From the IMG/VR virus record IMGVR_UViG_3300036770_007539, positions 237,008 to 301,007 of that record: a DNA stretch of 64,000 nt, one strand, 5' to 3'. The notes below the pieces were generated by a model. It worked only from the letters and a program-made list of their open reading frames with translations, was not told the DNA's origin and did not search any database. The position numbers and the translations under genes are program-made. This document shows, in pieces, positions 35,536-50,802 of the stretch (positions are counted from its first letter, which is position 1; each line of letters begins with the position of its first letter).

Positions 35536-35819
35536 GCGGTCATCGAAGATTCGACGCAGCATAGGGGCGTCGAGACGAGCCGCCGTTAGCGGTGCTCTAA
35601 CAGAGCAGTCACGGGCTAGCCCGTGAATCGAGCCGGGCGATTCCCGGTGGTGAGCAAGGGATCTTGCGGCTTTGCCGGTTGAAGCCGCAAGATCCCTTGC
35701 CCTTGATAATCTGTGGAAGCTGTGCATAATGGTGTGCATGGCTTTGGGGGTCAATCCCCGCTTTGCCGGAGAGTGTCCGGTAACGTCCAAGGGGACGCAT
35801 GTCCCCGGAAAGGACTTTC

Positions 35820-36185
35820 TTGAACCTCCAAAAGAGGATCGAGGAAGTGGACCAGGCGCTCGCGCGTCTGGTCCAGAGCGAGATCGTCGTCGCGCAGGTA
35901 GTGCTCGACGATCTGATCTACCTCCACCGCCCCGCCAGCCGTCAGCACGTCTTGCGACAGCGGGCGGATCGCCTACTCCAGGATCGGGACTGGCGAGTCC
36001 AGCCGATCCTGGAGCGGCGCGAGCGACTGGAGCGCCTTCGCGGGCTGCTCGTCGCTCGCGCCGCACGCGCCGCAGGTCGCGACACCTGCGGCTACTGTGG
36101 GTGGGACAACGGTCCCATCGACCCCGCCACAGGTCGCGGTCTCAGCCGTCAAGGCTGGGATTGCGGCTATTGCGGGGGGAACTAA
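35820..36185 (+). CDS. Coiled-coil protein with a C-terminal Zn finger
   Basis: CGYCGWD..CGYC; TTG start after AAAGGA. Confidence 0.6.
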   Translation: MNLQKRIEEVDQALARLVQSEIVVAQVVLDDLIYLHRPASRQHVLRQRADRLLQDRDWRVQPILERRERLERLRGLLVARAARAAGRDTCGYCGWDNGPIDPATGRGLSRQGWDCGYCGGN

Positions 36186-36243
36186 CCCTTCTCTCCGCAT
36201 CGTTTCCTCCGCGCTCCCCTTCGGGGTCGAGCGCGGGGGAGGC

Positions 36244-36312
36244 TGCATCTTCTCGCTTGGAGGCGAGCGCCCCTTGCGGGGCGGACGGGTTCGATTCCCG
36301 TAGGATGTACCA
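36244..36312 (+). ncRNA. Anticodon-less tRNA-like element 3 (four-arm)
   Basis: TGCATCTT/AGGATGTA; GG-containing D-like loop; 4-nt-loop middle arm; ACGGG-TTCGATT-CCCGT; ends ACCA. Confidence 0.75.
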
Positions 36313-36380
36313 TGAGAGCTTGTCTCTCCCGCGTCGGACGGATTCCGATTGTCTGCGATCGAGAAAGGAGGACTGTCCAC

Positions 36381-36722
36381 ATGGCACAGTACCTCGGAAA
36401 CGCCTTCTCGCTCGGTATGCTCGATTGTCTCACGGCGGAAACGCCTGTGAGCGTCGAGTGTGCCGCCTTCACGCTCGACGAGGCACGCGCCTACGTCGAG
36501 CACAACCGCCCGACCTCGACGGTCGGGCACCTCGACACGGCGGAACTCTTCTCCGCCATGTTGGGGTCTTCCGTGGAGATGCGCCGCGTCTCCACGTCTC
36601 TGATCGGCGGGGATGAGATCCTCGTCGGTCAATACAACGGTCCGCGTCTTCCGGAGGGGGCGAAGAGCCTCCCCGAGGGCGCCAAGGTCCGCTGGATTCT
36701 GGCGCGCATCGTCGCGCGCTGA
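36381..36722 (+). CDS. acrIII-1: DUF1874 / AcrIII-1-like viral ring nuclease (anti-CRISPR type III)
   Basis: YLGNAFS, TLDEAR, STVGHLDTAELFSAMLG, EMRR, GDEIL, RLPEG match the STIV B116 / SIRV1 gp29 / YddF pattern. Confidence 0.8.
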   Translation: MAQYLGNAFSLGMLDCLTAETPVSVECAAFTLDEARAYVEHNRPTSTVGHLDTAELFSAMLGSSVEMRRVSTSLIGGDEILVGQYNGPRLPEGAKSLPEGAKVRWILARIVAR

Positions 36723-36881
36723 GGGTCCACACTCGCCCCTGGTTCCCCGCAAGGGTTGAGCCGGGGGCGTCCCTTCGGGGGAATATCTTTGGAAACTGCC
36801 TGCAAGTTCTGGCTTGTGGGCAGCTTCGAGGGATTGTCCCTTGACCGTAGCTAGGCGGACACCTAGCATCAGGAGGGTCAC

Positions 36882-37106
36882 ATGACTCTTCAAGAAGCAA
36901 TCCGAGAGGTCCGAGACCTTTCGGGAATCCCGGAGGAGCAGCTGCTCCGGGATTGGAACGAGAAGAAGTGCCAGTCTATGGACTGGCACTTCGACACCGA
37001 GACGGTCGAAGACCGTCTCGGAGAGTTGGTGACGTACTTCTACGTGGAAATCATCCCCGAAGGGGATGGTTTCCGCGTCAGGTCTCGAAAAGAGACCTGG
37101 CGATGA
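36882..37106 (+). CDS. Hypothetical protein
   Basis: AGGAGG RBS; 74 aa. Confidence 0.6.
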   Translation: MTLQEAIREVRDLSGIPEEQLLRDWNEKKCQSMDWHFDTETVEDRLGELVTYFYVEIIPEGDGFRVRSRKETWR

Positions 37107-37413
37107 GCCTCGCCCCCGCGTTCCCCTTCGGGGTCGAGCGCGGGGGCACTCGCGGGTTGAGCCGAAAGGTTCCCCGCTCTGACTTCAGGTGGCTCCGACG
37201 CTGATAACGGCGCGGGTTTGATACCCGCTGGAGGACACAGAACATCCTCCTAGCGAAAAGCCGCAGCGGGGAGTGCTTCCGATTCGGGTTACGGTGCAGG
37301 TTTGAGTCCTGCTCTCCCGCGTCACGGGGGTCGGTTGAGACGCCGCCGAACGGAAGCAACGCCTGATTGCAACAACAATAAAGGGGGCGCATATCCCCCG
37401 GAAAGGATATGGT

Positions 37414-38127
37414 TTGAGGACCATCTGCATCGGCGACATCCACGGATGTATCGCCGAGTTTCAAAAGCTCGTGGAGGTTCTCGCGCCCACGAGCGAGGAT
37501 CGGATCGTCCTGTTGGGCGATCTGATCGACAAGGGTCCAAAAAGCGCAGAAGTGGTTCGCTTCGCCCGCGAGATCGGAGCGACCACCATTCAGGGCAACC
37601 ACGAGGAGAAGGCTCTTCGATGGTTTGCCCACGAGAAGACTCGGATCGCCACGGGGAAGGCGAATCCGATGAGCCCTCCCGAGCACAAGGTTCGGGAGTG
37701 GAACACGATCCCCGCCGATGATCGGGAGTGGCTGGCAGCTGCTCCCGTTTACACGGATCTCGGCTCCGGGTTCCTCGCCGTTCACGGCGGGATGCTGCCC
37801 GGGGTCAAGCCACAAGATCACAAGAAGGGAATCCCCCTCCGCCTGAGGTTCGTCAACGACAAGGGCAAGTTTCTGCCCCTCGACGACGACCACGGCGATC
37901 CTGAGGGAGGTATCCCCTGGTACCAGGTCTACGATGGGGAGCACTCCCTGGTGGTGGGTCACACGGTTCACAGCCTGGAGTATCCCCGAATGGATCGTAT
38001 CGGGGATCGGGTGATCTGGCACCTGGACACGGGTTGCGTTCATGGTGGTCGCCTGACGGCGCTCATCCTGGAGACGCAAGAAGTCGTCCAGGTACAAGCG
38101 TCCCAAGTCTACAAGGCGCGGGACTGA
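37414..38127 (+). CDS. Calcineurin-like metallophosphoesterase (ApaH/PrpE/Pnkp-phosphatase-like)
   Basis: GDIHG, GDLIDKG, GNHE, HGG, GHT, LDTGCVHGGRLTA. Confidence 0.9.
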   Translation: MRTICIGDIHGCIAEFQKLVEVLAPTSEDRIVLLGDLIDKGPKSAEVVRFAREIGATTIQGNHEEKALRWFAHEKTRIATGKANPMSPPEHKVREWNTIPADDREWLAAAPVYTDLGSGFLAVHGGMLPGVKPQDHKKGIPLRLRFVNDKGKFLPLDDDHGDPEGGIPWYQVYDGEHSLVVGHTVHSLEYPRMDRIGDRVIWHLDTGCVHGGRLTALILETQEVVQVQASQVYKARD

Positions 38128-38447
38128 GGCGATTGGATTGTTCCTGCGTTCCCCGCAAGGGTTGAGCGCAGGAACAAGTTTCAAGAAGAAAGGAAGAGGA
38201 AGTGGAAATCTGTATGGTTTCGGGTTTTCCGACTCCTTGCGGGTGTTTTGCCTGCCAGGAGTCGGTGGAGCAGGCGCGCGGTGGCAACTGCCACTGCAGC
38301 GCCTGCTGCAAGGTTCGCTTCGGAAACGAAGCGAACGAAGCGAACGAAGGTTGCCGATGGGAGGCGGTTCGACCGCCTCGTCCTCGGCAGTAGGAATCGC
38401 CCCATCGCGTTCCCCCTTGCGGGGTCGAGCGCGATGGGGATTTTTCT

Positions 38448-38683
38448 GCGCTACATTGGCTATATCTGAGATCTTGACATATTCGTTGCTGATGCAGAAT
38501 CTTTTTTTCTTCAATGATTTTTCTTTTTTCTTTTCTACGGGAGGGAGAAACAAGAGAATCAATGAGCTAAGATATTCTTCAAAAGAAACGACTTGTCATT
38601 TATCTTTTACGAGATCAAACACATTCGGAGCCGATGCAGCTCTGATTCGTTTATCAAACGTTTGTTTAGTTCTCAGCTAGGGC
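38448..38683. repeat. AT-rich spacer element 2
   Basis: GCGCTACATTGGCT ... AGCCGATGCAGC ... GCTAGGGC. Confidence 0.75.
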
Positions 38684-38717
38684 TAGGGTGTTCGTTTCTG
38701 CGTGAATCTGTGCAGCC

Positions 38718-38873
38718 TTGACAACGGGCGGATCGATGCTAGATTGTATGGTGTGAGAGAGAGCAACGAATCGAAACAAGCGAGCGAATGAGCGAACGCA
38801 TAAGCCGCGACGGTAGCGGTTAGCGGGTAGCGGATAGCGCGTAGCTTGACACGGTTGGATTCGCTGCTAGGCT
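38718..38873 (+). promoter_or_regulatory. Tandem sigma70-like promoters, unit 3
   Basis: TTGACA 38718-N16-TAGATT; TTGACA 38846-N16-TAGGCT. Confidence 0.75.
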
Positions 38874-38894
38874 TTCTCATAGAAGGGAGGTTAC

Positions 38895-39200
38895 ATGCAA
38901 CAGATTTGTGGAAGATGCTCCGGAAGGGAGAGTCATTCCTGTTGCCCTGATTGCAGGGGAAAGGGCTGGCTTTCCCGCGCGGACGTTCGCGTTCTTCGCT
39001 TGAAGCAGGCGGCATTCTGTTTGCTTCACGAGAAGGCGCGCGAGCATTGGCTCACGCTGAGTGAGCCGCGTCCGCGCCAGGAGTCCTTCGTGCTGGACTA
39101 CGTGTTCAAGCACGAGCAATGGTACTTCGAGACGATCGTCTCGAAGTTTACCCCGGAGCAGAAGCGCACGCTTCTGCGTCGGTTCCCCTGCAATCCCTGA
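38895..39200 (+). CDS. Hypothetical protein with a DnaJ-type Zn motif
   Basis: CGRCSGR..CPDCRGKG. Confidence 0.6.
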   Translation: MQQICGRCSGRESHSCCPDCRGKGWLSRADVRVLRLKQAAFCLLHEKAREHWLTLSEPRPRQESFVLDYVFKHEQWYFETIVSKFTPEQKRTLLRRFPCNP

Positions 39201-39307
39201 ACCGGGTAGAGCGAGCCCTCGCAAGGGGGCTCGTTCCCTACAACCGGATCTGGATCGTGATTGATCTAGGTTCGATTATAGGGATTACCCCTATTGAAAG
39301 GAGGAGC

Positions 39308-39445
39308 ATGAAGTTTCTGGAAAAGCTCTCGAATCGATTGCCCTACGTCGTTCAAGAGTCCCCGCTCGACCCGATCACTTGGATCTTTGCGGTCCCTTTG
39401 CTGGTCCTTTACGGGATTGGCTACATTGTCGGGGGATTGACGTGA
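39308..39445 (+). CDS. Small membrane peptide
   Basis: GAGGAG RBS; hydrophobic C-terminal half. Confidence 0.5.
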   Translation: MKFLEKLSNRLPYVVQESPLDPITWIFAVPLLVLYGIGYIVGGLT

Positions 39446-39615
39446 AAGACGACTTCCTCGACGATATCATCGCAAAGATCGACTCTCTTCGCATCGAGGA
39501 GTGCGAGAGCGGGGCGATCATTCGCAAGCCGGAGGTGAGCGACTTCAAGCGTCCCTCCCTTCTACCCAAGATCATCAACATGCGATCCTTGCTGGTCGAT
39601 TCTAGCAAGTCGTGA
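39442..39615 (+). CDS. Hypothetical protein
   Basis: GTG start overlapping the upstream stop. Confidence 0.45.
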   Translation: MKDDFLDDIIAKIDSLRIEECESGAIIRKPEVSDFKRPSLLPKIINMRSLLVDSSKS

Positions 39616-39621
39616 ACGGCA

Positions 39622-39687
39622 GCATCCCCTCGTGTGGTTGCGAGCACCTGAAAAGGTGGACAGGTTCGATTCCTGTGGGATGCACTA
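39622..39687 (+). ncRNA. tRNA-like element 4 (compact cloverleaf)
   Basis: GCATCCC/GGGATGC; CTCG-TGTGGTTG-CGAG; CACC-TGAAAA-GGTG; ACAGG-TTCGATT-CCTGT; ends ACTA. Confidence 0.75.
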
Positions 39688-39747
39688 CCGCGTCGGACGG
39701 ATTCCGATATCTCTTGAATGGGGGCAAAGCTCCCGGAAGGATTCTTC

Positions 39748-40131
39748 ATGTCGAATGATGACCGTATCGAGCGATTTGCTCGCTCGATCGCCTTGAAGCT
39801 GTACAACGATTCATGGTCCGAGAACGACCTCAAGTACTTTCTCGTACCCCGCCCGCCGCCTGCGTGGGTGGTTTGCAATGTTGCAGCTTCCAATGCGTTC
39901 ATTAGAGGCGGCGAACCTCTGGATCGAGAGGGCATGATCGCTCTTGCTGGTGATTGTGCAAGGAAAATCTTTGCAATCTTCCAGGAGGAGATGTTCATAG
40001 ATTCGGAGGTGACTGTTCCATCTCCCCTCTACCAGCAGGAAGATATCGAGCAGGCGATCTTGACCATCCCTGCGAGGGTGGACGAGGCTCTCGAAGAAGC
40101 GAAGAAACCCCCGATTCGTGCCATCGCATGA
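39748..40131 (+). CDS. Hypothetical protein
   Basis: RBS after a structured leader. Confidence 0.6.
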   Translation: MSNDDRIERFARSIALKLYNDSWSENDLKYFLVPRPPPAWVVCNVAASNAFIRGGEPLDREGMIALAGDCARKIFAIFQEEMFIDSEVTVPSPLYQQEDIEQAILTIPARVDEALEEAKKPPIRAIA

Positions 40132-40293
40132 GTTTGGTGTGGTATCGTCCCTGGCTCCCCTCTTCGGAGGGTCAAGCCGGAGGCACCCCTTCGGGTGAAT
40201 ATCTTTGGAGCCTGCTTGCAAGTTTCTTGTAGGCAGGTTCGAGGGATTATCTCTCGACCGATACCGGACGGATATCCGGCAAAGGGAGACATC

Positions 40294-40629
40294 ATGTACG
40301 ATGATGATGTGCTCGAAGCTCTGCTGGTGCTCTTGACTGAGCATCAGCGGTTGGAGAGGCTTCTGAACGCTCAGAAGTCTCGTGGGATCGCCTTCGAATG
40401 CCTTCTCCGCCAGCAGAAAGCTGTCGAGAAGGCTCTCTTCTCTCGCACGATGCGGGGGAAGATTCGCCGCCAGCTCCGCGACGCCGCCGACAAGGCGGCA
40501 GTCGAGAAGATGCACGCAGCCGCCGCCAAGAAGCTGCGAGAGGCAGAAGCTGAGAAGCGTTGGGAGGCGGAGGAGCGAATGAAGCAAACGTGGCGAGAGC
40601 TTGGCGCGGTCGCCGCCAAATTTCCGTAG
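40294..40629 (+). CDS. Coiled-coil hypothetical protein
   Basis: GGGAG RBS; Glu/Lys/Arg/Ala-rich. Confidence 0.6.
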   Translation: MYDDDVLEALLVLLTEHQRLERLLNAQKSRGIAFECLLRQQKAVEKALFSRTMRGKIRRQLRDAADKAAVEKMHAAAAKKLREAEAEKRWEAEERMKQTWRELGAVAAKFP

Positions 40630-40795
40630 TGTTCTAGATCGAATCCGTCCCATCGCGTTCCCCTTCGGGGTGAGCGCGATGGGGCGACCCTTCATGGGAA
40701 TATCTTTGGAAGCTACCTGCAAGTTTCTTGCAGGTAGCTTCGAGGGATTGTCCCTTGATTGAAACCAGGCAAATACCTGGTCTTTTGGAGGCATC

Positions 40796-41086
40796 ATGGG
40801 CATCATCATCGAAGTTGTGAACCACCCCTCTGCTAACGAAAAAACAAAATGGTGGATGATTGAGACGTTGGAGAACGTCTTCAACATCTCCTTGACTGCT
40901 GAGGAGGATCGCCAGTTGGATATGGTGATGGAGAATTTGCCCGTGGGAGGTACGATTCGTATCTCTCACGACAGTCTTCCTGTGGAGTACTTACTTCACC
41001 GAGCGCAGGAACGAGACGTTCCTTACTCTTGCGGTGAGGAATGCTGCGGAATCGAATCCTACGAATGGGTTCGGTTGTTGACATGA
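40796..41086 (+). CDS. Hypothetical protein with CGEECCG motif
   Basis: GGAGG RBS; paralog of 34899..35111. Confidence 0.65.
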   Translation: MGIIIEVVNHPSANEKTKWWMIETLENVFNISLTAEEDRQLDMVMENLPVGGTIRISHDSLPVEYLLHRAQERDVPYSCGEECCGIESYEWVRLLT

Positions 41087-41206
41087 CTTGGGAGGATCTT
41101 GGGGGAGTGGCAACGTTGCTGCTCCTCTTTCTGATGGTTCTCTTTGCGTGAAGTCCTGTCCGGGGCGAGGTTGAGCCGAAAGGTTCCCTCGTTCCGGGTC
41201 TTTTCT

Positions 41207-41444
41207 GCGCTACACTGGCTATTTCTTTGGAGATCATGCATGTTCAGATTCTTTTTTGTAATCAAAATCTTTCAGTGTTTTTCCTTTTTCTTTTTTCACA
41301 ACATAAGAGAAATAAACAACAATGATAAATGTGGTTTCAATAAACGATTTCTAACGATCATTTCTTTTCAAAGAGACATGAATGTTCAGAGCCTATGCAG
41401 CCCTGATTGTGTTATCAAACGTTCGTTTAGTTCTTAGCTAGGGC
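41207..41444. repeat. AT-rich spacer element 3
   Basis: GCGCTACACTGGCT ... AGCCTATGCAGC ... GCTAGGGC. Confidence 0.75.
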
Positions 41445-41959: not shown

Positions 41960-42068
41960 GCCGGAATGGGCGAGCCCTTGCGGGCTCGTTCCCTGCAATC
42001 GGACCTGGATCGTCACTGATCTAGGTTCGACTCCAGGGAATCTTTCCTGGTCTTTCGGAGGTGTGTTT

Positions 42069-42530
42069 ATGGTCAAGGTCGTCATCATGCAAGGTGTCCC
42101 TGGTTCGGGCAAGTCGAGCTACGTCAAGTCGCTGCGACCCGTGGCGACGGTGGTCTGCTCGGCGGATACGTTCTTCGAGTCGTGGAGCCCGGAAACGGGT
42201 GCTACCTATAACTTCGACCCGTCCAAGCTCGGCGAGGCGCACGGCGAGTGCCTGTTGAGTTTCGTGGACGCCATGGAATATGCCAACCAAGACGGCGATA
42301 CGGTGGTGGTGGATAACACCAACACCACCGCCATGGAGATTGCACCCTACATGGCGCTCGCGAACGCCTACGGGTGCGAGGTTGAGATCGTGCGAGTCCA
42401 GTGCGACCCCGAGATCGCCGCTGCTCGCAACATTCACGGCGTTCCGCTGGCTTCGATCCGCCGCATGGCAGACAACATCGCGAACTTCCACGCCCCGCCA
42501 TTCTGGCGGTTCAAGCTGACGGAAGTGTGA
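42069..42530 (+). CDS. P-loop kinase (AAA_33 / polynucleotide kinase / N4BP2-like)
   Basis: GVPGSGKS Walker A; SADTFF; VVVDNTN; ARNIHGVP. Confidence 0.85.
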   Translation: MVKVVIMQGVPGSGKSSYVKSLRPVATVVCSADTFFESWSPETGATYNFDPSKLGEAHGECLLSFVDAMEYANQDGDTVVVDNTNTTAMEIAPYMALANAYGCEVEIVRVQCDPEIAAARNIHGVPLASIRRMADNIANFHAPPFWRFKLTEV

Positions 42531-42632
42531 ACTAGGACGGGCGAGCCTGCAAGGGCTCGCTCCCTGCAATCGGGATTCGATACGGATCGAATCTCGATTC
42601 TAGGGAATGTCCCCTAGCAACATGGAGGCTTT

Positions 42633-42890
42633 ATGCCCTTGTTCGTTTCTTTCGAGGATGACAACATCGACCCCACCTACGCCGACGCTTCCGACGCGGT
42701 GATCGTTTCTGCGCTGCACGATGCGGCGTTGGAAACCAATCCGTGTGTGGGTCGCGGAGTGCGGCATCGTGCTCCGGTCGCGCCTCGCACCGAAAAGGAG
42801 ATCATCGCCTTCGCCAAGGTGATGGGATGGCGAACGGAAGGATCGGGGAGTGATCTTGTGATCTACCCCGCTGTTTCCGAGGATGACTGA
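42633..42890 (+). CDS. Hypothetical protein (paralog of 47019..47270)
   Basis: MPLFVSF.D...DPTYA shared. Confidence 0.7.
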   Translation: MPLFVSFEDDNIDPTYADASDAVIVSALHDAALETNPCVGRGVRHRAPVAPRTEKEIIAFAKVMGWRTEGSGSDLVIYPAVSEDD

Positions 42891-42963
42891 TAGGACGGGC
42901 GAGCCCCTTGGCAACAAGGGGCTCGCATCTCTCGACACTCAATCCGAAACGTGAAAGGCTGAT

Positions 42964-44398: not shown

Positions 44399-44525
44399 CT
44401 GAATCGTAAGGGCGAGCCTCTTCGGGGGCTCGCTCCCTGCAATCGAATATTGACTCCCGGCATGTTCTGGGATACAGTCGATGTTCGATTCTAGGGAGTT
44501 TCCCCTAGTTTCTTCGGAGGAAAGC

Positions 44526-44735
44526 ATGCGTTGTTTCATGTATGGCGAAGTTCACACGATGGACGGCAAGCGCAAGATGGTGCGACGTTACTTCGACGGA
44601 TCGGGGAACGTCTACGCAGCTGCACTTCAAGAACTTTACAAGCGTAAAGACAAGGGTTCCCCTTGGAGAGGTGATGCAGTCAACGTCATCACTCCTTTGG
44701 GACAGAGGGTGATCGTCGAAGTTCCTCATCTGTAA
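44526..44735 (+). CDS. Hypothetical protein
   Basis: GGAGG RBS after a switch-like leader. Confidence 0.6.
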   Translation: MRCFMYGEVHTMDGKRKMVRRYFDGSGNVYAAALQELYKRKDKGSPWRGDAVNVITPLGQRVIVEVPHL

Positions 44736-44788: not shown

Positions 44789-44914
44789 ATGTCCAAACGC
44801 AAGAACTCCGATGAAGTTCTCGAAGCTCGAATCGCTCATCGTCTCGCCATGATTGCCGCTTTGGAGGCGGAAATCGCGGAACTTCGCAAGCAACAAGGAA
44901 AGGATAACCAATGA
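44789..44914 (+). CDS. 41 aa coiled-coil peptide
   Basis: AAAGGAG RBS; hand-translated. Confidence 0.5.
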   Translation: MSKRKNSDEVLEARIAHRLAMIAALEAEIAELRKQQGKDNQ

Positions 44915-45189
44915 CCGCTCGATCTGCTCGTCGACAGCACTCCAAGTATCTGCGTGAGATGGGTGTGCCCTTCATCATGCGCCAGAGTCTCGCCAAGACT
45001 CGCTACCAAGGATTGATGGATGACCATTACTTGAGTCGAAAAACTCAGCTGGTCACTACCTACTACGACAGCAACGGTTGCGATTGCTGTCCTCCTTCCA
45101 AGATTCAATATTGGGAGGTGGTGGTGCAGAAAAAGACCTATCGAATCCAAACGGAAGATGGTCGAATCCAATCTTGCCTCAAGTTCTGA
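44911..45189 (+). CDS. Hypothetical protein
   Basis: ATGA coupling; 92 aa. Confidence 0.55.
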   Translation: MTARSARRQHSKYLREMGVPFIMRQSLAKTRYQGLMDDHYLSRKTQLVTTYYDSNGCDCCPPSKIQYWEVVVQKKTYRIQTEDGRIQSCLKF

Positions 45190-45237
45190 GGCTTGGGGAC
45201 GCATCTGGGGCTGAACGGTCCTGGGTGCGTCCCCGAA

Positions 45238-45489
45238 GCGCTACATTGGCTCAACAGTGATCTTTGCATGTTCAGAACGTTCTTTATGCAAAAGCATCTT
45301 TTTTCTTTCAATGATTGCTATTTCTTCTTTCAAGTAACGACATGAATAATCAATGAATGACAAGTATCTTTCAAACAAAGAACTTTCAAATCATATATCT
45401 TTTCAACCAGATCTTTGTTCGTTCAGAGCCTATGCAGTCCTGACTTTTTCACTGGCTTTTTGACGGTTTTCGTCCCTTCTGGCTAGGGC
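45238..45489. repeat. AT-rich spacer element 4
   Basis: GCGCTACATTGGCT ... AGCCTATGCAGT ... GCTAGGGC. Confidence 0.75.
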
Positions 45490-45522
45490 TAGATCGCTTG
45501 TTTTCGCGCATATTCGCGCGCC

Positions 45523-45649
45523 TTGACAATCGGCGGATCGTTGCTAGTATGTAGGGTGTGAGAGAGAGCACGAACGAACGAATGAACGAACGAACGCTAG
45601 CACGACGCTAGCGCGATGCGTTTGACGCGGCTCGATTCGATGCTACGTT
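45523..45649 (+). promoter_or_regulatory. Tandem sigma70-like promoters, unit 5
   Basis: TTGACA 45523-N16-TAGTAT; TTGACG 45622-N16-TACGTT. Confidence 0.75.
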
Positions 45650-45683
45650 GCAAGTGTCGCCGATACATGGCGAGGGAGGCAAT

Positions 45684-46157
45684 ATGTGGATTGACCAGCG
45701 CGAGATCGACCGAGAGAACGAGAACTACAGCCTGGAGTCGCACCAGGAGGTAGTTCAGGAACAGGCTCGGAAAGAGATGATCGCGAGCTTGACCAAGCTC
45801 TGGGAGGAGACGGATCGCAAGATCGACGGCAAACGCGAAGCTCTCACGAGTGAGAGCTTCGACGAATACATCCGTCGGATCGCAGATGATAACGCCTATG
45901 AGAAGCGCGAAGCTCTCTCGGAGAAGCTCGGACGCAAACTCACCCGTGATGAGGAGCACGAAATCTTTCGCGAGGAGAAGGATAGCATCATTCAAAAGAT
46001 CAATGGCGAGATCGAGATCCTGGTCGCCAAGCTCGACATGATCGAAACGCAACTTCGCAGCCTGGGTGCTCGCAAGGCACGTCCTTACGAGCACTGGAAC
46101 GAGGAGGAGCACATCGTTCAGTATCTGGAAACCAGGAACGACAACCGCGACTACTGA
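45684..46157 (+). CDS. Acidic coiled-coil protein (paralog of 53676..54170)
   Basis: Shared LGAR..RPYEH.NE.E..YLE.R..NDR C-terminus. Confidence 0.7.
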   Translation: MWIDQREIDRENENYSLESHQEVVQEQARKEMIASLTKLWEETDRKIDGKREALTSESFDEYIRRIADDNAYEKREALSEKLGRKLTRDEEHEIFREEKDSIIQKINGEIEILVAKLDMIETQLRSLGARKARPYEHWNEEEHIVQYLETRNDNRDY

Positions 46158-46212
46158 ACCCAAGATCCCGGCTCGCCCTTCGGGGCGGGTCGGGTTCGAC
46201 AACGGAGGAATC

Positions 46213-46485
46213 ATGGAAAAGATTGCACGAGTGGTTGAGCACCCCGAAGCCCAAAAGTACGACCTGCGATGCAACTATCATCGGGGCGTCCTGGTGGACG
46301 TGCCTTCGGACAAGGTTCTGCGAGGGTACGATGGCGGTCTGTACGCCACCGTGGACGGTGAGTGGTACAGCGTTCATCCGTCCAATACTTCCAACCTGAT
46401 CGGAGCCCTGGGTATTCGATACCAGCTCCGAGAGGAAGGCTCGGAGGGAGACATGATCTCCTTCCTGCAAGCGCAAACCGACTGA
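46213..46485 (+). CDS. Hypothetical protein
   Basis: GGAGG RBS. Confidence 0.6.
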   Translation: MEKIARVVEHPEAQKYDLRCNYHRGVLVDVPSDKVLRGYDGGLYATVDGEWYSVHPSNTSNLIGALGIRYQLREEGSEGDMISFLQAQTD

Positions 46486-46587
46486 TCTGGACGGGCGAGC
46501 CCGCAAGGGCTCGCTCCCTGCAATCGGGATTCGATACGGATCGAATCTCGATTCTAGGGAATGTCCCCTAGCAACGGAGGTATTGTG

Positions 46588-46908
46588 ATGGGCAAACTGG
46601 CAGGATCGATGTGGAGGATCAATAAGTCGAGCATGGTGGTTCCCCTCCAGCCTGTCGAGGACGCGGATGCGTATTGGTTTGGCTATGCTGAACTTGACGA
46701 GGGAGACACGGTAATCATCCTCGGTGAACCGGTCCCCACGGTCGATTCAGACCCCGCTAAGAAGCACCACAGCTACGTCCCTGTCGAGTTTCGTAACGGT
46801 TACGCGCCTTTTTTCGGGTGGCGCAACGGTTATGTGTCCAACTACAAGGGTTACATGAACGCGACCTACTTCATCTGCGAATCTATCTGGATGGAGAGAG
46901 TAGGGTAA
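46588..46908 (+). CDS. Hypothetical protein (SH3-like?)
   Basis: GGAGG RBS after a switch-like leader. Confidence 0.55.
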   Translation: MGKLAGSMWRINKSSMVVPLQPVEDADAYWFGYAELDEGDTVIILGEPVPTVDSDPAKKHHSYVPVEFRNGYAPFFGWRNGYVSNYKGYMNATYFICESIWMERVG

Positions 46909-47018
46909 TATCCAGAACTAGGACGGGCGAGCCCGCAAGGGCTCGCTCCCTGCAATCGGGATTCGACACTTGTCGAGTTTCGATTCTAGGGAATGTCCCC
47001 TAGCACCAAGGAGGCTTT

Positions 47019-47270
47019 ATGCCGCTTTTCGTTTCTTTCCAGGATTCCAGCACCGATCCCACCTACGCGCTCGCCGATGATGTGGTCCTCGTCGAGAGCA
47101 GCGACGACGATGACAACAATCCTTGCGTCGGGCGCTCGGTTCGTCGCACCGCACCCGTCGCTCCGATGACGGCGGAAGAGATTCGCGCTTTCGCTATGGT
47201 CATGGGTTGGTCATGGGAGACGCACCGTGATGGGACACTGGTCCTATCTACGGGCGTCCAAGATATCTGA
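47019..47270 (+). CDS. Hypothetical protein (paralog of 42633..42890)
   Basis: Same leader and N-terminus. Confidence 0.7.
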   Translation: MPLFVSFQDSSTDPTYALADDVVLVESSDDDDNNPCVGRSVRRTAPVAPMTAEEIRAFAMVMGWSWETHRDGTLVLSTGVQDI

Positions 47271-47389
47271 TAGGAAGGGCGAGCCCTCGCAAGGGGGCTC
47301 GCTCCCTGCAATCGAACCTTGATGCCGAAAACATCGGAGCTATGTCAAGGTTCGATTCTAGGGATGTCCCTAGTGTTACGGAGGTTTCC

Positions 47390-47848
47390 ATGAACGACGA
47401 TTATCTGCACGTCAACCAGTTCAGCTTCAACTTCCGCCAGAATCAGTACGAGATCCTGGAACTCAAGGGTGTCAACATCTACGAAGATAGGACCATCTGG
47501 TGCTCTCATGCCGATGATGGGGAAGGCTGGGATGTATTCATCTGCTACCAGCCCGAAGATGACGACAATACTGGGACCATCAATCCTAGCCATCTCAACA
47601 AGTCTTGGGCTAAGAAGTTCAAGACTGAGATGCAAGAAGATCAGGACGGTGAACCCGCTCCTTGGAACATGGGCAGGAATCTGAGCATGAGCGAGGTTCA
47701 AAGCATGGTTCGCTACTTCAGGCGAAAGATACTGGTGGGTGTCCTTCGGCAGAAACGCGACCGTGAACTCGGTTACTGTGACGAGGATCTCAACCGAGAA
47801 AAGTGGTCCAACTACTGGATCGGCGAAGGCTATACCGAATACTACTGA
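47390..47848 (+). CDS. Hypothetical protein (paralog of 52511..52957)
   Basis: Shared GEGWDVFI.Y.PEDDD, SWAKKFKTEMQEDQDG, MVRYFRR. Confidence 0.75.
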   Translation: MNDDYLHVNQFSFNFRQNQYEILELKGVNIYEDRTIWCSHADDGEGWDVFICYQPEDDDNTGTINPSHLNKSWAKKFKTEMQEDQDGEPAPWNMGRNLSMSEVQSMVRYFRRKILVGVLRQKRDRELGYCDEDLNREKWSNYWIGEGYTEYY

Positions 47849-47902
47849 AACAACGCACCTGGGCATGTGTCTAAACTGCCCTTTTCTTGAAAGGAGAATG
47901 TC

Positions 47903-48193
47903 ATGAACAATGATTTTCGTGCTTCCATTCTTGCCGCTCGTGAAGATTGGCGCATATCCAATCTGATCAAAGCAATCCAGTCTCATCTGGACGGTGAGGA
48001 AATCTATCTTCCCCGATTCGAGGAAGATCAGCAGGGCGGTCATTTCGTGCTCTCGGAATGGATCAAGATCCCTGCTTCCCGAATCATGAGAATATTGGGA
48101 GTCGACCATCCCCGCGATTTGGGATGGGGGCGTGATGGTGAACCACCGACTCCGAATCCTTCGGCAATTCCTTTCAAAGGAGAATGTCAATGA
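47903..48193 (+). CDS. Hypothetical protein
   Basis: AAAGGAG RBS. Confidence 0.6.
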   Translation: MNNDFRASILAAREDWRISNLIKAIQSHLDGEEIYLPRFEEDQQGGHFVLSEWIKIPASRIMRILGVDHPRDLGWGRDGEPPTPNPSAIPFKGECQ

Positions 48194-48390
48194 ACGTGAA
48201 TGAGTTTCTGAAAGAGGCATTGGAGCCGCAACCTCAAATGCGCAAGGGGCAGCATTTCATCAATCGTCTTACGGTGGTGAAGCCCTGGCTATCTTACAAG
48301 CTCCAGCAGACAGGCTTGGATCCATACTACGTTGACAGCAAGCTGCCTGCTGCAATCCAATACACCGTAGAAAACTGGGATCTCTTCTAA
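48190..48390 (+). CDS. Hypothetical protein
   Basis: AAAGGAG RBS; ATGA coupling. Confidence 0.6.
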   Translation: MNVNEFLKEALEPQPQMRKGQHFINRLTVVKPWLSYKLQQTGLDPYYVDSKLPAAIQYTVENWDLF

Positions 48391-48400
48391 AAGAGATACC

Positions 48401-48461
48401 GCATCGACTGGTCCGCACCCGCAAGGGTGCGGAGGAGGTTCGATTCCTCCACGATGCACTA
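48401..48461 (+). ncRNA. Anticodon-less tRNA-like element 5
   Basis: GCATCG/CGATGC; CTGGT linker; GCAA hairpin; GGAGG-TTCGATT-CCTCC; ends ACTA. Confidence 0.75.
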
Positions 48462-48513
48462 AGCACACAAGCTGTTGCATTGGGCAATTGCAAGTGCTTT
48501 CGTGAGGTGAGTC

Positions 48514-48891
48514 ATGGATTTCGTTCTTTCCCGCAAGACTGGCAGCGACATGTACGGATTCTGCCCCCTTTTCCAGTCTTTGGTCATCGGGAATCTGCGC
48601 GTCTCCATCCAAGCGAGTCGAACCCACTTCTCCTCTCCCCAAGCAGACTTCTCCAACTCGGACTTGTATTCTGAGTTCGAAGTGGCGCTGCTGACGCTCC
48701 GAGATGGCAAGTGGTTTCATCCGGAGAAGGACAAGCGGTTCGCTCAAACCGAATGGGCAAAGTACTACTGGAAAGACTACGATGACGTAGCTGCTTACGT
48801 ACCGCGTCATCTGGTGGCGCAAATGATAACTGACCTGCGCTTGGATGCGGCTTCAAGGCGAAAGCGTATGAAGCCGATTGCCAAGAAGTGA
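48514..48891 (+). CDS. Hypothetical protein
   Basis: GAGGTG RBS; 125 aa. Confidence 0.65.
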   Translation: MDFVLSRKTGSDMYGFCPLFQSLVIGNLRVSIQASRTHFSSPQADFSNSDLYSEFEVALLTLRDGKWFHPEKDKRFAQTEWAKYYWKDYDDVAAYVPRHLVAQMITDLRLDAASRRKRMKPIAKK

Positions 48892-48956
48892 CCGCACAGC
48901 CTCTCGGCTCGCCCTTCGGGGCGGGTCGGGAGGCTTTTTTTTTTGCGAAGAAGTAG

Positions 48957-49210
48957 AGCGGCTTCGCCGCTCCAATGTTTCTATCAATTTCTTTTTTTCA
49001 AAGCCATATTCATTTCAATTTCAAAAACAAATCATTTCTTTGAAATCTATTCAGATTCAATTACAAGATACTTTGATTTCAAACAGTATCTTTGATCATC
49101 TTATTCCATACAATGTTTTTCCATTCTTTTCTAACAAAGCCAATGTAGCGCTGACATTCCGTCAATGGTTTTTGTCCCGTTTTTTGCCTTTTACCCCTTC
49201 GGGCTAGGGC
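48957..49210. repeat. AT-rich spacer element 5 (variant)
   Basis: GAGCGGC-TTC-GCCGCTC CAATG ... AGCCAATGTAGCGC ... GCTAGGGC. Confidence 0.7.
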
Positions 49211-49234
49211 AGAATACGTCTAAACGCACGCGAT

Positions 49235-49360
49235 TTGACAAGCGCAAGATCGTTGCTAGTATGTAGGGTGTGAGAACGAATGCGAACACGCAAACGCTCT
49301 CGTCGAGAGTAGCACGGCGCGATTGACAATGTTTGACAATCGCGGATTCGTGGCTACAAT
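49235..49360 (+). promoter_or_regulatory. Tandem sigma70-like promoters, unit 6
   Basis: TTGACA 49235-N16-TAGTAT; TTGACA 49333-N16-TACAAT. Confidence 0.8.
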
Positions 49361-49397
49361 ACAGATGCGGCAATCAAGCCGCGTTTCGGAGGTTGTC

Positions 49398-49853
49398 ATG
49401 TCCAACACGTTCAAGATCGATCCCTCGTTCCTCGTCAAGTTCGTTTCCTCCGTCGTGGATGCTGCGAACAAGCGGATTCCGGTCAAGGATCTGGCTGGAA
49501 TCCTGCAAAGGCTCGACAGCGATCAGGGGCGCGTGGCTGCGTCGTTCGACGCCGACGATCTGGAAAAGGTGATCGTCGGCACGGTCAACAACCTGCACGG
49601 ATTCGACATTCGTGCGGGTCGTTCGGGTGGCGTCGGGCGCGTGGAGATGTTCAAGGGTGGAGCATCCGACGAGCCGAGCGGTGTCGCCGCGCAGATCGCG
49701 GCACGTCTGCGTGAATACTGCAAGGCGGCTGGAAAGCCCTTGGAGATCCCCGAGTCCCGGCGGATCGTCAACGCTTACCTGAACGATCTGATCTTGCAGC
49801 AGGCACCGGGCAATCTGACGGCGGAGGATCTGCTGTCTCGATACGGCGGCTGA
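49398..49853 (+). CDS. Promoter-proximal protein (paralog of 51807..52232)
   Basis: Shared VDAAN.R.PV, RAGRSGGVGR, FKGG, NAYL. Confidence 0.75.
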   Translation: MSNTFKIDPSFLVKFVSSVVDAANKRIPVKDLAGILQRLDSDQGRVAASFDADDLEKVIVGTVNNLHGFDIRAGRSGGVGRVEMFKGGASDEPSGVAAQIAARLREYCKAAGKPLEIPESRRIVNAYLNDLILQQAPGNLTAEDLLSRYGG

Positions 49854-49982
49854 TCGGGTGAGGGAGCGAGCCTTTAGGGGCTCGCTCCCTGTAACCGAGG
49901 GTTGACACCGAAAACATCGGATCTATGTCAATCTTCGGTTACAGGGAGCAATTCCGCTATCCTGTATTCTGGGAGTGTTTGC

Positions 49983-50243
49983 ATGAGAATGCATGAGATT
50001 CTGGCACCGATCCGCGCGCACGCACGTCTCGCTCCGCTGGATCGTCTGTCCGTGGATGGTGCGAAGATCCTCGCCGACATGGTGTACGCCATGCGTGGCG
50101 CGGATCGTCGCTGTCAAGAGCACGCGGCGGATTGTCTCGCGGCTCTGCGTCCGCGTCTCTACGATCTCTGGGACGTGGCTCGCGCTGTCGAGCCGTGTCC
50201 AGAGTGGCTGAAGCCACTGGCGGAGTACGGTCCTCGACACTGA
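49983..50243 (+). CDS. Hypothetical protein
   Basis: GGGAG RBS after a switch-like leader. Confidence 0.55.
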   Translation: MRMHEILAPIRAHARLAPLDRLSVDGAKILADMVYAMRGADRRCQEHAADCLAALRPRLYDLWDVARAVEPCPEWLKPLAEYGPRH

Positions 50244-50316
50244 AACAAGGGCGGGGAACGAGCCCGAATGGGCTCGTTCCCCGCCTGTCTCTCATCTCAA
50301 ACCTGGAGGTTTTCAC

Positions 50317-50655
50317 ATGCGTATGCACCCCACTACTGCCATTCTCGTGACCCTCAACACCTTCGCCCGCGAATACGTCGAGTATTACGGAGGGGTGAAT
50401 CACCTGCTGGACGTTCCTGTTCTCGCGGAACAGGGGCGTGCGCTGGAGGCGGTCATCACCGCCATCTACAAGGGAATCGTCGATGGCAGTATCCCTGCCA
50501 ACGAGCGCACACGTCAAAGCGCGCAACAGTGGAGCGAGGGGTTGATTACCCTTCCAGAATCTCTGGCATTCCTGATCTCTGAGATGAAGCCGCCGAAAGG
50601 CATTCCCCTTCACGGTGAACGCTTGGCGGTCATTCTTGGAGGCTTCTTGCCTTAG
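50317..50655 (+). CDS. Hypothetical protein
   Basis: GGAGG RBS. Confidence 0.6.
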   Translation: MRMHPTTAILVTLNTFAREYVEYYGGVNHLLDVPVLAEQGRALEAVITAIYKGIVDGSIPANERTRQSAQQWSEGLITLPESLAFLISEMKPPKGIPLHGERLAVILGGFLP

Positions 50656-50802
50656 TCATCGACACGAGAGCGAGCCCTCGCAAGGGGCTCGCTCCCTGCA
50701 ATCGAACCTTGACGAGCACTTGTTGCTGTGATAACGTCAAGGTTCGATTCTAGGGGATTGACAATTCTGTGTGAGCTAACCTTTCCCTCAAAGGAGGTAT
50801 CA

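What the first reader, a model, noticed from the sequence alone, without database searches (positions are those of the whole stretch)
35708..50760. Switch-like leader: a long stem whose 3' strand can re-pair with an RBS-proximal hairpin, in two sequence families
Seen: family B (39209, 41968, 42539, 44410, 46493, 46925, 47277, 49861, 50666) is a GGGCGAGCC-loop-GGCTCGCTC hairpin, then a ~17-21 bp stem CCCTGCAATCG...CGATTCTAGGG with G-U pairs. The TAGGG end can instead pair downstream (CTAGGG/CCCTAG, ATAGGG/CCCTAT, CCAGGGAA/TTCCTGG, ACAGG/CCTGT), just before GGAGG. Both alternatives covary. Family D (36785, 40201, 40702, diverged 35708) has unrelated sequence but the same topology (ATCTTTGGA...TCGAGGGAT-TG-TCCCT). 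Known: T7 and SPO1 early mRNAs are cut by RNase III between genes. Inference: cleavage of the long stem frees the 3' strand to form a protective 5' hairpin on a monocistronic mRNA, or this is a new two-state translational switch.
Basis: partly seen in the sequence, partly recalled or inferred. Interest (0 to 1): 0.85.

Follow-up and report, generated by a model that had tools for sequence, protein, structure and literature searches.

The report
Repeated hairpin cassettes between phage early genes
Between the early genes of an uncultured 301-kb freshwater phage lies a repeated, evolutionarily conserved RNA cassette: a hairpin, a two-turn stem and a small overlapping hairpin before the ribosome site, which most likely marks where long transcripts are cut and capped with protective hairpins, and often hides a promoter in its tip.

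Summary
The sequence observation largely holds. Nine family-B copies sit between co-directional early genes of a jumbo phage. I found 17 more in related metagenomic phages and none in 185,579 bacterial genomes. Each copy has a GC hairpin (H1) and a 20-21 bp stem (LS) with a conserved mismatch at position 6. Usually (22/26) there is also a 5-7 bp hairpin (H3) that reuses the last 6 nt of LS, 6-10 nt before GGAGG.

H1, LS and H3 all covary. The shared 5-bp LS base is almost invariant, so its pairing is consistent but not proven. The two states are predicted to lie within about 2 kcal/mol. Predicted SD accessibility does not differ between them, so a translational on/off switch is not supported.

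In 15/26 copies the LS apex carries an oriented sigma70-type promoter (TTGAC-17 nt-TAnnnT). Its predicted start lies inside the 3' strand, so those transcripts can only form H3.

Best reading (about 0.45): an intercistronic cassette combining an RNase III-type processing helix, 3' and 5' protective hairpins, and an optional internal promoter.

Family D (3 copies, this window only) has the long stem, but its alternative hairpin is weaker evidence. Nothing is experimentally shown.

The parts
39210..39310 (+). Family B copy 1 (short type): H1 39210-39235, LS 39236-39283, H3 39278-39294 (AUAGGG/CCCUAU), SD, ATG 39308
41968..42071 (+). Family B copy 2 (short): H1 ~41968-41990, LS 41991-42038, H3 42033-42050 (CCAGGGA/UUCCUGG), ATG 42069 (AAA_33 kinase gene)
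42540..42635 (+). Family B copy 3 (short): H1 42540-42561, LS 42562-42605, H3 42600-42617, ATG 42633
44411..44528 (+). Family B copy 4 (long, 62-nt LS): H1 44411-44434, LS 44435-44496, apex promoter TTGACT-17-TACAGT 44450-44478, H3 44491-44508, ATG 44526
46494..46587 (+). Family B copy 5 (short): H1 46494-46515, LS 46516-46559, H3 46554-46571, GTG 46585 / ATG 46588. LS+H3 are identical to copy 3 although the downstream gene is unrelated
46926..47021 (+). Family B copy 6 (short): H1 46926-46947, LS 46948-46991, H3 46986-47003, ATG 47019 (paralogue of the gene after copy 3)
47278..47392 (+). Family B copy 7 (long): H1 47278-47303, LS 47304-47363, near-promoter TTGATG-16-TATGTC 47319-47346, H3 47358-47373, ATG 47390
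49865..49985 (+). Family B copy 8 (long): H1 49865-49886, fully paired 21-bp LS 49887-49946, near-promoter TTGACA-16-TATGTC 49902-49929, H3 ACAGG/CCUGU ~49940-49966, ATG 49983
50669..50805 (+). Family B copy 9 (long): H1 50669-50693, LS 50694-50755, apex promoter TTGACG-17-TAACGT 50709-50737, no convincing H3, ATG 50803
36770..36884 (+). Family D copy 1: small hairpin 36770-36782, LS 36785-36834, optional hairpin 36826-36844, hairpin H4 36850-36867, SD 36871-36877, ATG 36882. Preceded by a family-A hairpin at 36737-36766
40184..40296 (+). Family D copy 2: small hairpin 40184-40197, LS 40201-40247, optional hairpin 40239-40257, H4 40264-40279, ATG 40294
40688..40798 (+). Family D copy 3: LS 40702-40748, optional hairpin 40740-40758, H4 40765-40780, ATG 40796
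35655..35801 (+). Leader of the first unit ('diverged D'): 18-bp hairpin 35655-35699, 13-bp hairpin 35716-35745, GGGG/CCCC hairpin 35746-35759, hairpin 35766-35780, ATG 35799. Its resemblance to D is weak
42885..42925 (+). H1-type hairpin standing alone after a stop codon (another at 50250-50285). This shows H1 is a separable module

Best explanation
Family B, and probably family D, is a modular intercistronic RNA cassette of the phage's host-polymerase-transcribed early operons. Its modules, in order, are as follows. (1) H1 is a GC-rich tetraloop hairpin a few nt after the stop codon. It becomes the 3'-terminal protective hairpin of the upstream message. (2) LS is a two-turn (20-21 bp) irregular helix with a conserved base sequence and a mismatch. 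It is a double-strand-specific (RNase III-type) processing site in read-through transcripts. (3) H3 cannot coexist with the base of LS. It forms once the LS 5' strand has been cut away, giving the downstream monocistronic mRNA a 5' stem-loop just ahead of an open SD. In more than half of the copies the LS apex also holds an oriented sigma70-type promoter. Its predicted start lies about 11-12 nt before the end of LS, so transcripts born there contain only the 3' strand and fold the same H3-SD leader as processed read-through RNA. Shown here: the structures, their covariation, the near-equal predicted energies, the promoter motif, and conservation across related phages. Inferred: cleavage, the enzyme, the protective roles, and promoter activity.
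For: There are nine window copies, far above chance, and 17 more in 9 related metagenomic contigs. All lie in the same orientation between a stop codon and an SD.

H1+LS is 96.9% paired against 89.5% in shuffles. Thirteen pairs change on both sides, 0 of 500 shuffles match, and slid controls give 24-50% pairing. RNAalifold finds the same fold.

G-U pairs outnumber A-C mismatches 64 to 22 on the coding strand, which points to an RNA-level constraint.

H3 covaries.

The LS-full and H3 states lie within about +/-2 kcal/mol in most copies.

LS length matches the 22-bp ideal RNase III substrate. Mismatches direct single-strand cuts that leave stabilising 3' hairpins, and unstructured 5'-monophosphate ends invite RNase E decay (PMC3867540).

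A promoter motif with a 16-17 nt spacer is present in 15 of 26 copies on the + strand and 0 of 26 on the - strand. There are 11 different 17-nt spacers, and the -10 element always ends 17-18 nt before the LS end. One of these promoters was also picked up by the generic scan. Stand-alone TTGACA-N17-TAACGT promoters occupy equivalent gaps in relatives.

Orthologous leaders are as conserved as the adjacent CDS or more so: 91% against 70%, and 95% against 72%.

tRNA-like minihelices fill the same slot in other gaps.

True unit ends use canonical T-run terminators.
Against: There are no experimental data, and the host is unknown.

No RNase III gene lies in the 64-kb window, so a host enzyme must be assumed.

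The base of LS (CCCUR/YAGGG plus AAUCG/CGAUU) is conserved in sequence far beyond what a generic dsRNA nuclease needs. That suggests a sequence-specific partner.

Four of the 26 copies lack H3, and one (L051) has no closely following gene.

A third pairing, between the 5' flank of H1 and the H3 loop/3' arm, is predicted in many copies and has some support (39 of 10000 shuffles). The precursor may therefore be a three-way junction, whose fit to RNase III is unclear.

One IMG/VR phage keeps both 11-mers without the inner stem.

Family D evidence rests on three paralogous copies.
Confidence: 0.45

Rival explanations
1. The conserved stem base is the docking site of a dedicated, probably phage-encoded, sequence- and structure-specific factor rather than generic RNase III. 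The factor could be an endoribonuclease, an RNA chaperone or regulator, or a DNA-binding regulator of the embedded promoter. The hairpins then serve that factor, for example in timing of early-gene shut-off or processing by a private nuclease.
For: Eleven-nt arms (CCCURCAAUCG / CGAUUCYAGGG) are nearly invariant across phages whose proteins are only 35-70% identical, while the inner stem varies freely. The position-6 mismatch is kept in 23 of 26 copies. An unrelated-looking IMG/VR phage keeps both 11-mers 48 nt apart without a complementary interior. Most early proteins are ORFans with no Pfam match, so an unknown factor is possible.
Against: No candidate protein was identified. The spacing between arms varies from 22 to 53 nt, which does not suit a simple dimeric DNA operator. 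The inner stem and H3 covary, which a pure DNA-binding model does not need. The G-U excess argues for an RNA-level constraint.
Confidence: 0.2
2. The elements are mainly recombination or mobility cassettes, like PeSLs of T4-like phages or Correia/nemis MITEs of Neisseria. On this view they are repeated promoter-plus-stem-loop modules that spread and shuffle small early genes, and the alternative RNA pairings are by-products of repeated CCCU/AGGG motifs.
For: LS+H3 is identical in front of unrelated genes (copies 3 and 5). Leaders are more similar than adjacent CDS, which suggests gene conversion. The composition, stem-loop plus sigma70 promoter plus SD between small ORFan genes, matches the PeSL description (PMC4122927). 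Correia elements likewise combine inverted repeats, promoters and RNase III cleavage (PMC2649163). Short and long variants differ by an apex insertion or deletion.
Against: No target-site duplications flank the elements. The only transposase in the window, an IS200-like gene at 19887-20303, sits in an unrelated AT-rich context with no similar hairpins. The element is absent from 185,579 bacterial genomes. It is kept at orthologous positions in relatives. Compensatory changes maintain three helices, which implies selection on RNA structure and not only on sequence identity. This rival is also compatible with the best explanation rather than exclusive of it.
Confidence: 0.15
3. The element is an equilibrium two-state translational switch: LS-full is the OFF state and H3 the ON state, or the reverse. 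The balance is set by temperature, a ligand, or the ribosome terminating on the upstream gene.
For: The two states are mutually exclusive and predicted to be nearly isoenergetic. ddG is mostly between -1.2 and +2.2 kcal/mol, and P(LS base) ranges from 0.01 to 0.98 among copies. H3 ends 6-10 nt before the SD.
Against: Predicted SD and start-codon accessibility is the same in state A, state B and truncated RNA. The same holds for family D. The SD is never part of either helix. Four copies work without H3. There is no conserved unpaired pocket that would suggest a ligand. No Rfam riboswitch hit appears even at E<=1.
Confidence: 0.07
4. H1 and/or LS are U-tail-less intrinsic terminators or attenuators that partition the operons transcriptionally.
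For: They are stable GC hairpins directly after stop codons. Internal promoters follow in many copies, which would be needed after termination.
Against: There is no T-run after H1 or LS. Real unit ends in the same region do have hairpin plus T-run (38400-38450, 41155-41210, 48898-48945, 51294-51333). Five of the nine window copies have no internal promoter, so termination there would silence the downstream gene.
Confidence: 0.03

Closest known systems
RNase III processing sites between early genes of T7/T3 and of SP82/SPO1-type Bacillus phages
   Same: They are repeated, sequence-related irregular hairpins of about two helical turns between cistrons of host-polymerase early transcripts. Mismatches or loops are associated with single-strand cleavage that leaves a 3' hairpin on the upstream RNA (PMC3867540; SP82 sites are cited in PMC4838370).
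   Different: There is no sequence or Rfam similarity. Here a separate H1 hairpin precedes the helix, and the 3' strand is pre-programmed to refold into a 5' hairpin (H3). Half of the copies also carry a promoter in the helix apex. Cleavage has not been demonstrated.
PeSLs (promoter-early stem-loops) of T4-like phages
   Same: These are conserved composite intergenic motifs, stem-loop plus sigma70-like promoter (N17 spacer) plus SD plus start codon, repeated between small ORFan early genes (PMC4122927; PMC2839356).
   Different: In PeSLs the stem-loop lies upstream of the promoter and is read as a terminator. Here the promoter lies inside a 20-bp inverted repeat, 11 of 26 copies have no promoter, and a third hairpin overlaps the stem. 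The phage shows no T4-like markers in the window.
Correia/nemis repeat elements (CREE) of Neisseria
   Same: These are inverted-repeat elements with a conserved end and a variable core, in short and long forms. They are co-transcribed with neighbouring genes, can create promoters, and can be bound or cut by RNase III (PMC2649163 abstract).
   Different: CREE are chromosomal MITEs with target duplications and hundreds of copies. Family B shows no duplications, has a fixed orientation and slot, is confined to one phage clade, and is absent from bacterial genomes.
5'-terminal stem-loop mRNA stabilisers (ompA-type) and RNase III-dependent leader remodelling (lambda N, T7 0.3)
   Same: A hairpin at or near the 5' end that would shield a processed or primary transcript, and refolding of a leader after RNase III cutting (established knowledge, recalled from memory and not re-read here).
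   Different: In those cases the hairpin or remodelling is a single-gene feature. Here it is a repeated cassette, and no effect on SD exposure is predicted.

Membership tests
Bacterial RNase III processing site (T7 R1.1-type) | Double-helical segment of about two A-helical turns (about 20-22 bp) | tested here: met
   LS is 20-21 bp in all 26 copies, whatever the apex length. The reference length of 22 bp is from PMC3867540.
Bacterial RNase III processing site (T7 R1.1-type) | Internal loop or mismatch at the target site that directs single-strand cleavage | tested here: inconclusive
   There is a conserved 1x1 mismatch at position 6 in 23 of 26 copies, and an asymmetric apex loop in long copies. 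Whether either of these is the cleavage site is unknown.
Bacterial RNase III processing site (T7 R1.1-type) | Actual cleavage by RNase III with a 2-nt 3' overhang or a single nick | not testable with these tools
   This needs an enzyme assay or RNA-end mapping. No RNase III gene lies in the window.
PeSL promoter-stem-loop cassette | Stem-loop + sigma70-like promoter (N17) + SD + start, repeated between small early ORFs | tested here: met
   15 of 26 copies meet this overall. In the window, 2 copies match strictly and 2 nearly. H1 lies upstream and the SD and start codon downstream.
PeSL promoter-stem-loop cassette | Belongs to T4-like myoviruses, with breakpoints of insertions, deletions and gene swaps at the motif | tested here: inconclusive
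   No T4-like hallmark was found in the window. Identical leaders precede unrelated genes, and the apex promoter is present or absent at orthologous sites. Both hint at exchange, but no breakpoint analysis was possible on the short contigs.
MITE / Correia-like or REP-RAYT element | Terminal inverted repeats with target-site duplication, and mobilisation by a cognate transposase | tested here: not met
   The LS flanks are H1 and H3, not direct repeats. The only Y1 transposase (19887-20303) has unrelated AT-rich flanks. There are zero matches in 185,579 bacterial and archaeal genomes.
Riboswitch / translational RNA switch | Two mutually exclusive folds, one of which occludes the SD or start codon | tested here: not met
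   Mutually exclusive folds exist. However, SD and start-codon accessibility does not differ between them (family D).
Intrinsic terminator | GC hairpin followed by a U-run | tested here: not met
   There is no T-run after H1 or LS. The terminator scan lists only the unit-end hairpins, plus H3 of copy 4 as a weak match.
Any Rfam 15 family | Covariance-model match at or near the gathering score | tested here: not met
   At gathering threshold the window yields only 2 tRNAs and a group I intron. At E<=1, B copies hit only mir-23 at E 0.94.

The most novel reading that the evidence does not exclude
The cassette is a 'dual-origin leader'. A sigma70 promoter is deliberately buried in the apex of an RNase III-type helix, so that transcripts initiated there and read-through transcripts cut there converge on the same H3-capped 5' UTR. 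Four short G/C-rich segments are involved: the 5' flank of H1, the LS 5' base, the LS 3' base and the H3 3' arm. They exchange partners on cleavage so that both products end in clamped hairpins. Together with the tRNA-like minihelices in neighbouring gaps, this would mean that a jumbo phage punctuates its early operons with several classes of RNA-processing signals, much like mitochondrial tRNA punctuation.
Probability: 0.25. Interest if true: 0.75.

Novelty: new variant of a known kind. Interest (0 to 1): 0.55.

Why it matters
If the reading is right, this uncultured clade of freshwater jumbo phages controls the stoichiometry and lifetime of its host-takeover mRNAs with a compact, reusable RNA module. 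The module combines a 3' stabiliser, a processing helix, a 5' stabiliser, an SD and, optionally, an internal promoter.

It would be a natural counterpart of synthetic insulator parts (RNase III or ribozyme sites followed by a hairpin). It would also extend the T7/SP82 paradigm of RNase III punctuation to a very different phage group.

The promoter-inside-a-processing-hairpin arrangement links two ideas so far treated separately: PeSL-type promoter cassettes and RNase III sites.

With 26 sequences and three covarying helices, the element is a well-defined new RNA motif. It could be added to RNA family databases and used to find more relatives.

Tried and rejected
(1) Similarity to known phages. 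Megablast of 17 kb and 20 kb of the window against 50,697 phage records found nothing.

(2) Rfam. There was no family for B or D at gathering threshold or at E<=1.

(3) First IMG/VR pattern scans. The core found only the source contig and one chance hit, L006. The T-loop-like 15-mer found mostly real tRNAs.

(4) Metagenome scan. 

(5) The search for related loci with the first-gene protein or its alignment found only the source contig in IMG/VR.

(6) tRNA-like reading of family B, prompted by GGUUCGAUUC in the 3' strand. No T-arm can be drawn and ARAGORN is silent, so I rejected it. True tRNA-like minihelices exist elsewhere in the region.

(7) REP/RAYT idea, prompted by an IS200-like Y1 transposase. 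I rejected it because the context is unrelated.

(8) Extension of H1 by pairing its 5' flank with the LS 5' base shows no covariation signal.

(9) SD sequestration in family D precursors appears in some MFE folds but is not robust once flanking sequence is included.

(10) MAFFT could not put the H3 3' arms in register. I therefore tested H3 with swap and shuffle scripts instead of the count of structure pairs.

(11) P0018 contig: no DNA was available.

Full report
CONTEXT

The window is the last 64 kb of IMGVR_UViG_3300036770_007539, a 301-kb uncultured phage contig. Window position 49398 corresponds to contig position 286405.

The left half of the window is AT-rich (29-47% GC). It encodes virion, tail-fibre and DNA-repair proteins on the minus strand.

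From about 33.1 to 52.3 kb the composition jumps to 51-63% GC. All genes there are short, lie on the plus strand, and are almost all ORFans. They are organised in about six transcription units:
- Near-identical sigma70-type promoters with an extended -10 element lie at 35434, 38718, 41480, 45523, 49235 and 51625. A second promoter lies a little downstream of most of them.
- Canonical hairpin-plus-T-run terminators close the units (38400-38450, 41155-41210, 48898-48945, 51294-51333).
- The units are separated by spacers of about 300 nt that are AT-rich.

This is the layout expected of an early, host-polymerase-transcribed, host-takeover region. Related metagenomic contigs show the same mosaic, so it is not an assembly artefact.

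THE OBSERVATION: FAMILY B

The 18-nt core occurs 9 times against 0.02 expected, all on the plus strand. Every copy lies between a stop codon and the SD of the next co-directional gene. Each copy has three parts:
- H1 is a 9-11 bp GC hairpin with a tetraloop-type loop. It abuts the next helix with no linker.
- LS is a 20-21 bp helix that starts with CCCUR and ends with YAGGG. It contains G-U pairs, and 23 of 26 copies have a 1x1 mismatch at position 6.
- H3 is present in 8 of the 9 window copies. It is a 5-7 bp hairpin whose 5' arm is the last 6 nt of LS.

Whole elements fold far better than shuffled controls, with z between -5.2 and -7.6.

RELATIVES

A metagenome pattern scan gave three contigs with true elements, L051, L061 and L096. 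I then built a profile of the conserved first gene of the units (A1). It found 25 homologues, and their contigs yielded more elements in L161, L164, L165, L167, L168 and L172. This gave 26 distinct copies in total (alignment A2).

A stricter two-arm pattern found no match in one genome from each of 185,579 bacterial and archaeal species. In IMG/VR it found only the source contig and one odd locus, L173/L174, which keeps both 11-nt arms but not the inner stem.

The element is therefore specific to one clade of freshwater phages. At orthologous positions the leader is as conserved as the adjacent coding sequence, or more so: 91% against 70%, and 95% against 72%.

COVARIATION

On A2, H1+LS is 96.9% paired against 89.5% in column shuffles. 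Thirteen of 27 pairs change on both sides, 0 of 500 shuffles reach any observed measure, and sliding the partner by 1-3 columns drops pairing to 24-50%. RNAalifold predicts the same two helices independently and leaves position 6 open. G-U pairs outnumber A-C oppositions 64 to 22 on the gene strand, which argues for selection on the RNA rather than on a DNA palindrome.

MAFFT could not align the 3' arms of H3, so I tested H3 with scripts:
- All four copies with C at position 5' have a G partner, and both copies with A at 6' have a U partner.
- 19 of 22 tails pair best with their own 5' arm.
- Native arm-tail duplexes beat all 5000 shuffles.

H3 is therefore a real, selected helix.

The weak point is the 5 bp that LS and H3 compete for. 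Four of these pairs are invariant. The fifth is AU 12, GU 10, GC 4 and never a mismatch. My hypergeometric estimate that this arises by chance is about 0.07. The pairing is consistent, not proven.

ENERGETICS AND THE 'SWITCH'

With LS forced or with H3 forced, ensemble free energies differ by -3.7 to +6.7 kcal/mol, and mostly by -1.2 to +2.2. The unconstrained probability of the LS base ranges from 0.01 to 0.98 among copies. The two folds really are close competitors.

The mean unpaired probability of the SD and start codon is essentially the same in the LS state, in the H3 state, and in an RNA truncated inside the LS 3' strand. Neither helix touches the SD. An equilibrium translational on/off switch is therefore not supported.

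The picture is also not strictly two-state. The 4-7 nt just 5' of H1 can pair with the H3 loop and 3' arm, closing a three-way junction around H1 and LS. This is predicted in about half of the copies and has modest shuffle support (39 of 10000). A third sequence family in L061 folds the same way.

Copies fall into two types. Short copies have a 44-50 nt LS with a plain loop. Long copies have an LS of about 60-62 nt.

In 15 of 26 copies the long apex reads TTGACN, then a spacer (17 nt in 14 copies, 16 nt in one), then TAnnnT, often preceded by TGn. There are 11 different 17-nt spacer sequences. The same search on the complementary strand gives 0 of 26, although the -35-like TTGAC is present there by symmetry.

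The -35 element is LS positions 16-21, and the -10 overlaps the first bases of the 3' strand. The -10 always ends 17-18 nt before the end of LS, which places the expected start about 11-12 nt before that end. Such transcripts carry only the 3' strand, so H3 forms a few nt from their 5' end.

In the window, copies 4 (44450-44478) and 9 (50709-50737) match strictly; the generic scan also reported copy 4. Copies 7 and 8 are near matches. In relatives, plain TTGACA-N17-TAACGT promoters sit in equivalent gaps. At one orthologous site the window has the short form and the relatives have the long form.

The spacer itself usually forms a small covarying hairpin. RNA-level and promoter-level constraints therefore coexist.

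FAMILY D

Three copies (LS 36785-36834, 40201-40247, 40702-40748) share a 22-bp stem with compensatory changes, and a further covarying hairpin just before the SD. Each is preceded by a 'family A' hairpin in the position that H1 occupies in family B.

The proposed alternative hairpin (UCGAGGGA/UCCCUUGA) is possible. However, the MFE folds of D1 and D3, and the consensus fold, instead pair UCCCUU with an upstream G-run, which lengthens the stem to about 30 bp. With three paralogous copies and none in relatives, nothing more can be decided. The 'diverged' copy at 35708 is a different set of hairpins.

MECHANISM

The best-supported model is a processing-and-protection cassette.
- LS has the length of the idealised RNase III substrate (22 bp).
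- Mismatches at target sites favour single-strand cleavage, which leaves 3' hairpins that stabilise RNA.
- RNase III cuts that leave an unstructured 5'-monophosphate end trigger RNase E decay (PMC3867540). That gives a reason for the downstream product to refold into H3.
- H1, and possibly the upper part of LS, would protect the upstream product.

The apex promoter produces the same H3-SD leader de novo.

Two kinds of context support this. Five tRNA-like minihelices have an acceptor-like stem, a canonical T arm, and a 3' ACCA or ACUA. They sit in other gaps of the same region, two of them directly after a family-A hairpin, as if the slot after the 3' hairpin holds interchangeable endonuclease signals. 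Phage precedents also exist: T7 (my own knowledge) and SP82 (Panganiban and Whiteley 1983, as cited in PMC4838370).

Cleavage, the enzyme, stabilisation and promoter activity are all inferred. No RNase III gene lies in the window, and the rest of the genome could not be read.

RIVALS

- Dedicated factor (0.2). The near-invariant 11-nt arms, the retained mismatch and the L173/L174 locus suggest a dedicated sequence-specific factor.
- Recombination cassette (0.15). Identical leaders before unrelated genes, and the PeSL-like composition (PMC4122927), suggest a recombination-cassette role. Correia elements offer a bacterial analogy that combines inverted repeats, promoters and RNase III (PMC2649163). 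No target duplications or cognate transposase were found. This rival can coexist with the main model.
- Equilibrium switch (0.07) and terminator (0.03). Both are disfavoured by the tests above.

VERDICT

The element is real, conserved and structured, and it is new as a sequence family. It is most economically read as a new variant of phage intercistronic processing sites fused with a promoter cassette. The 'switch' is better described as programmed refolding after the 5' strand is lost. All functional statements await experiment.

Noticed in passing
window 33643-33697, 34541-34609, 36244-36311, 39622-39686, 48401-48460 (+): Five tRNA-like minihelices lie in intergenic gaps of the early region. 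Each has a 7-bp acceptor-like stem, a canonical T arm (GGUUCGAUUCC), tetraloop hairpins in place of the D and anticodon arms, and a 3' ACCA or ACUA. ARAGORN does not call them, and Rfam gives only sub-threshold tRNA-Sec/mascRNA hits. They look like RNase P/Z punctuation signals.
   Followed up: partly
window 34506, 36208, 36737, 37115, 38143, 38406, 40147, 40648 (+): 'Family A' is a repeated bulged hairpin (CCCGCGCUCCCC-UUCG-GGGG-UC-GAGCGCGGG and variants) placed directly after stop codons. It precedes family D stems or tRNA-like elements, so it appears to be the H1 equivalent of those gaps.
   Followed up: partly
window 33100-52300: A 19-kb island of 51-63% GC sits inside a 29-47% GC genome. 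It is built of about six units with near-identical extended -10 sigma70 promoters (TTGACA...TGCTAGTAT), tandem second promoters, and AT-rich spacers of about 300 nt carrying conserved blocks (CGCTACATTGGCTAT, GCTAGGGC).
   Followed up: partly
window 44740-44790 and 47855-47905; also L051, L096, L161, L164, L169: There is another conserved leader family (CACCTGGRGCATGTGTCTAAACTGC..., followed by AAAGGAGAAT and ATG). It is shared with distant relatives. I did not analyse it.
   Followed up: no
window 32684-32984: About 24 degenerate 11-nt tandem repeats (GATAGAATAGG) lie just upstream of the first early promoters (33108, 33231). A similar purine-rich array lies at the equivalent place in L051 (about 600-1200). 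It could be an iteron-like or protein-binding array.
   Followed up: no
window 19887-20303 (-): An IS200-like Y1 transposase gene (139 aa, Pfam Y1_Tnp E 4e-36) lies in the AT-rich structural region. Its flanks show no similarity to family B.
   Followed up: partly
L173 12099-12168 (-) and L174 166-235 (+): A different IMG/VR phage carries both 11-mers (CCCTACAATCG and CGATTCTAGGG) 48 nt apart, but the sequence between them is not self-complementary. This may be a remnant, or a hint that the arms are recognised as sequence.
   Followed up: partly
window 37414-38127 and 42069-42530 (+): A calcineurin-like metallophosphatase and a small AAA_33/zeta-like P-loop kinase are among the few annotatable early genes. 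This pairing is reminiscent of RNA-end healing enzymes. A second metallophosphoesterase lies at 55247-55966.
   Followed up: no
window 59131-59336, 55026-55099, 57081-57165 (+): A group I intron (Rfam 59.9 bits), tRNA-Lys(UUU) and tRNA-Leu(CAA) lie downstream of the early region. Relatives L051, L096 and L161 also carry tRNA genes at the corresponding place.
   Followed up: no
L061 1194-1290 (-): A third sequence family has the same architecture: H1, a 17-bp stem with a 2x2 loop, and GAGGG/CCCUC overlap. Its MFE closes a three-way junction by pairing AGGGU upstream of H1 with ACCCU downstream.
   Followed up: partly
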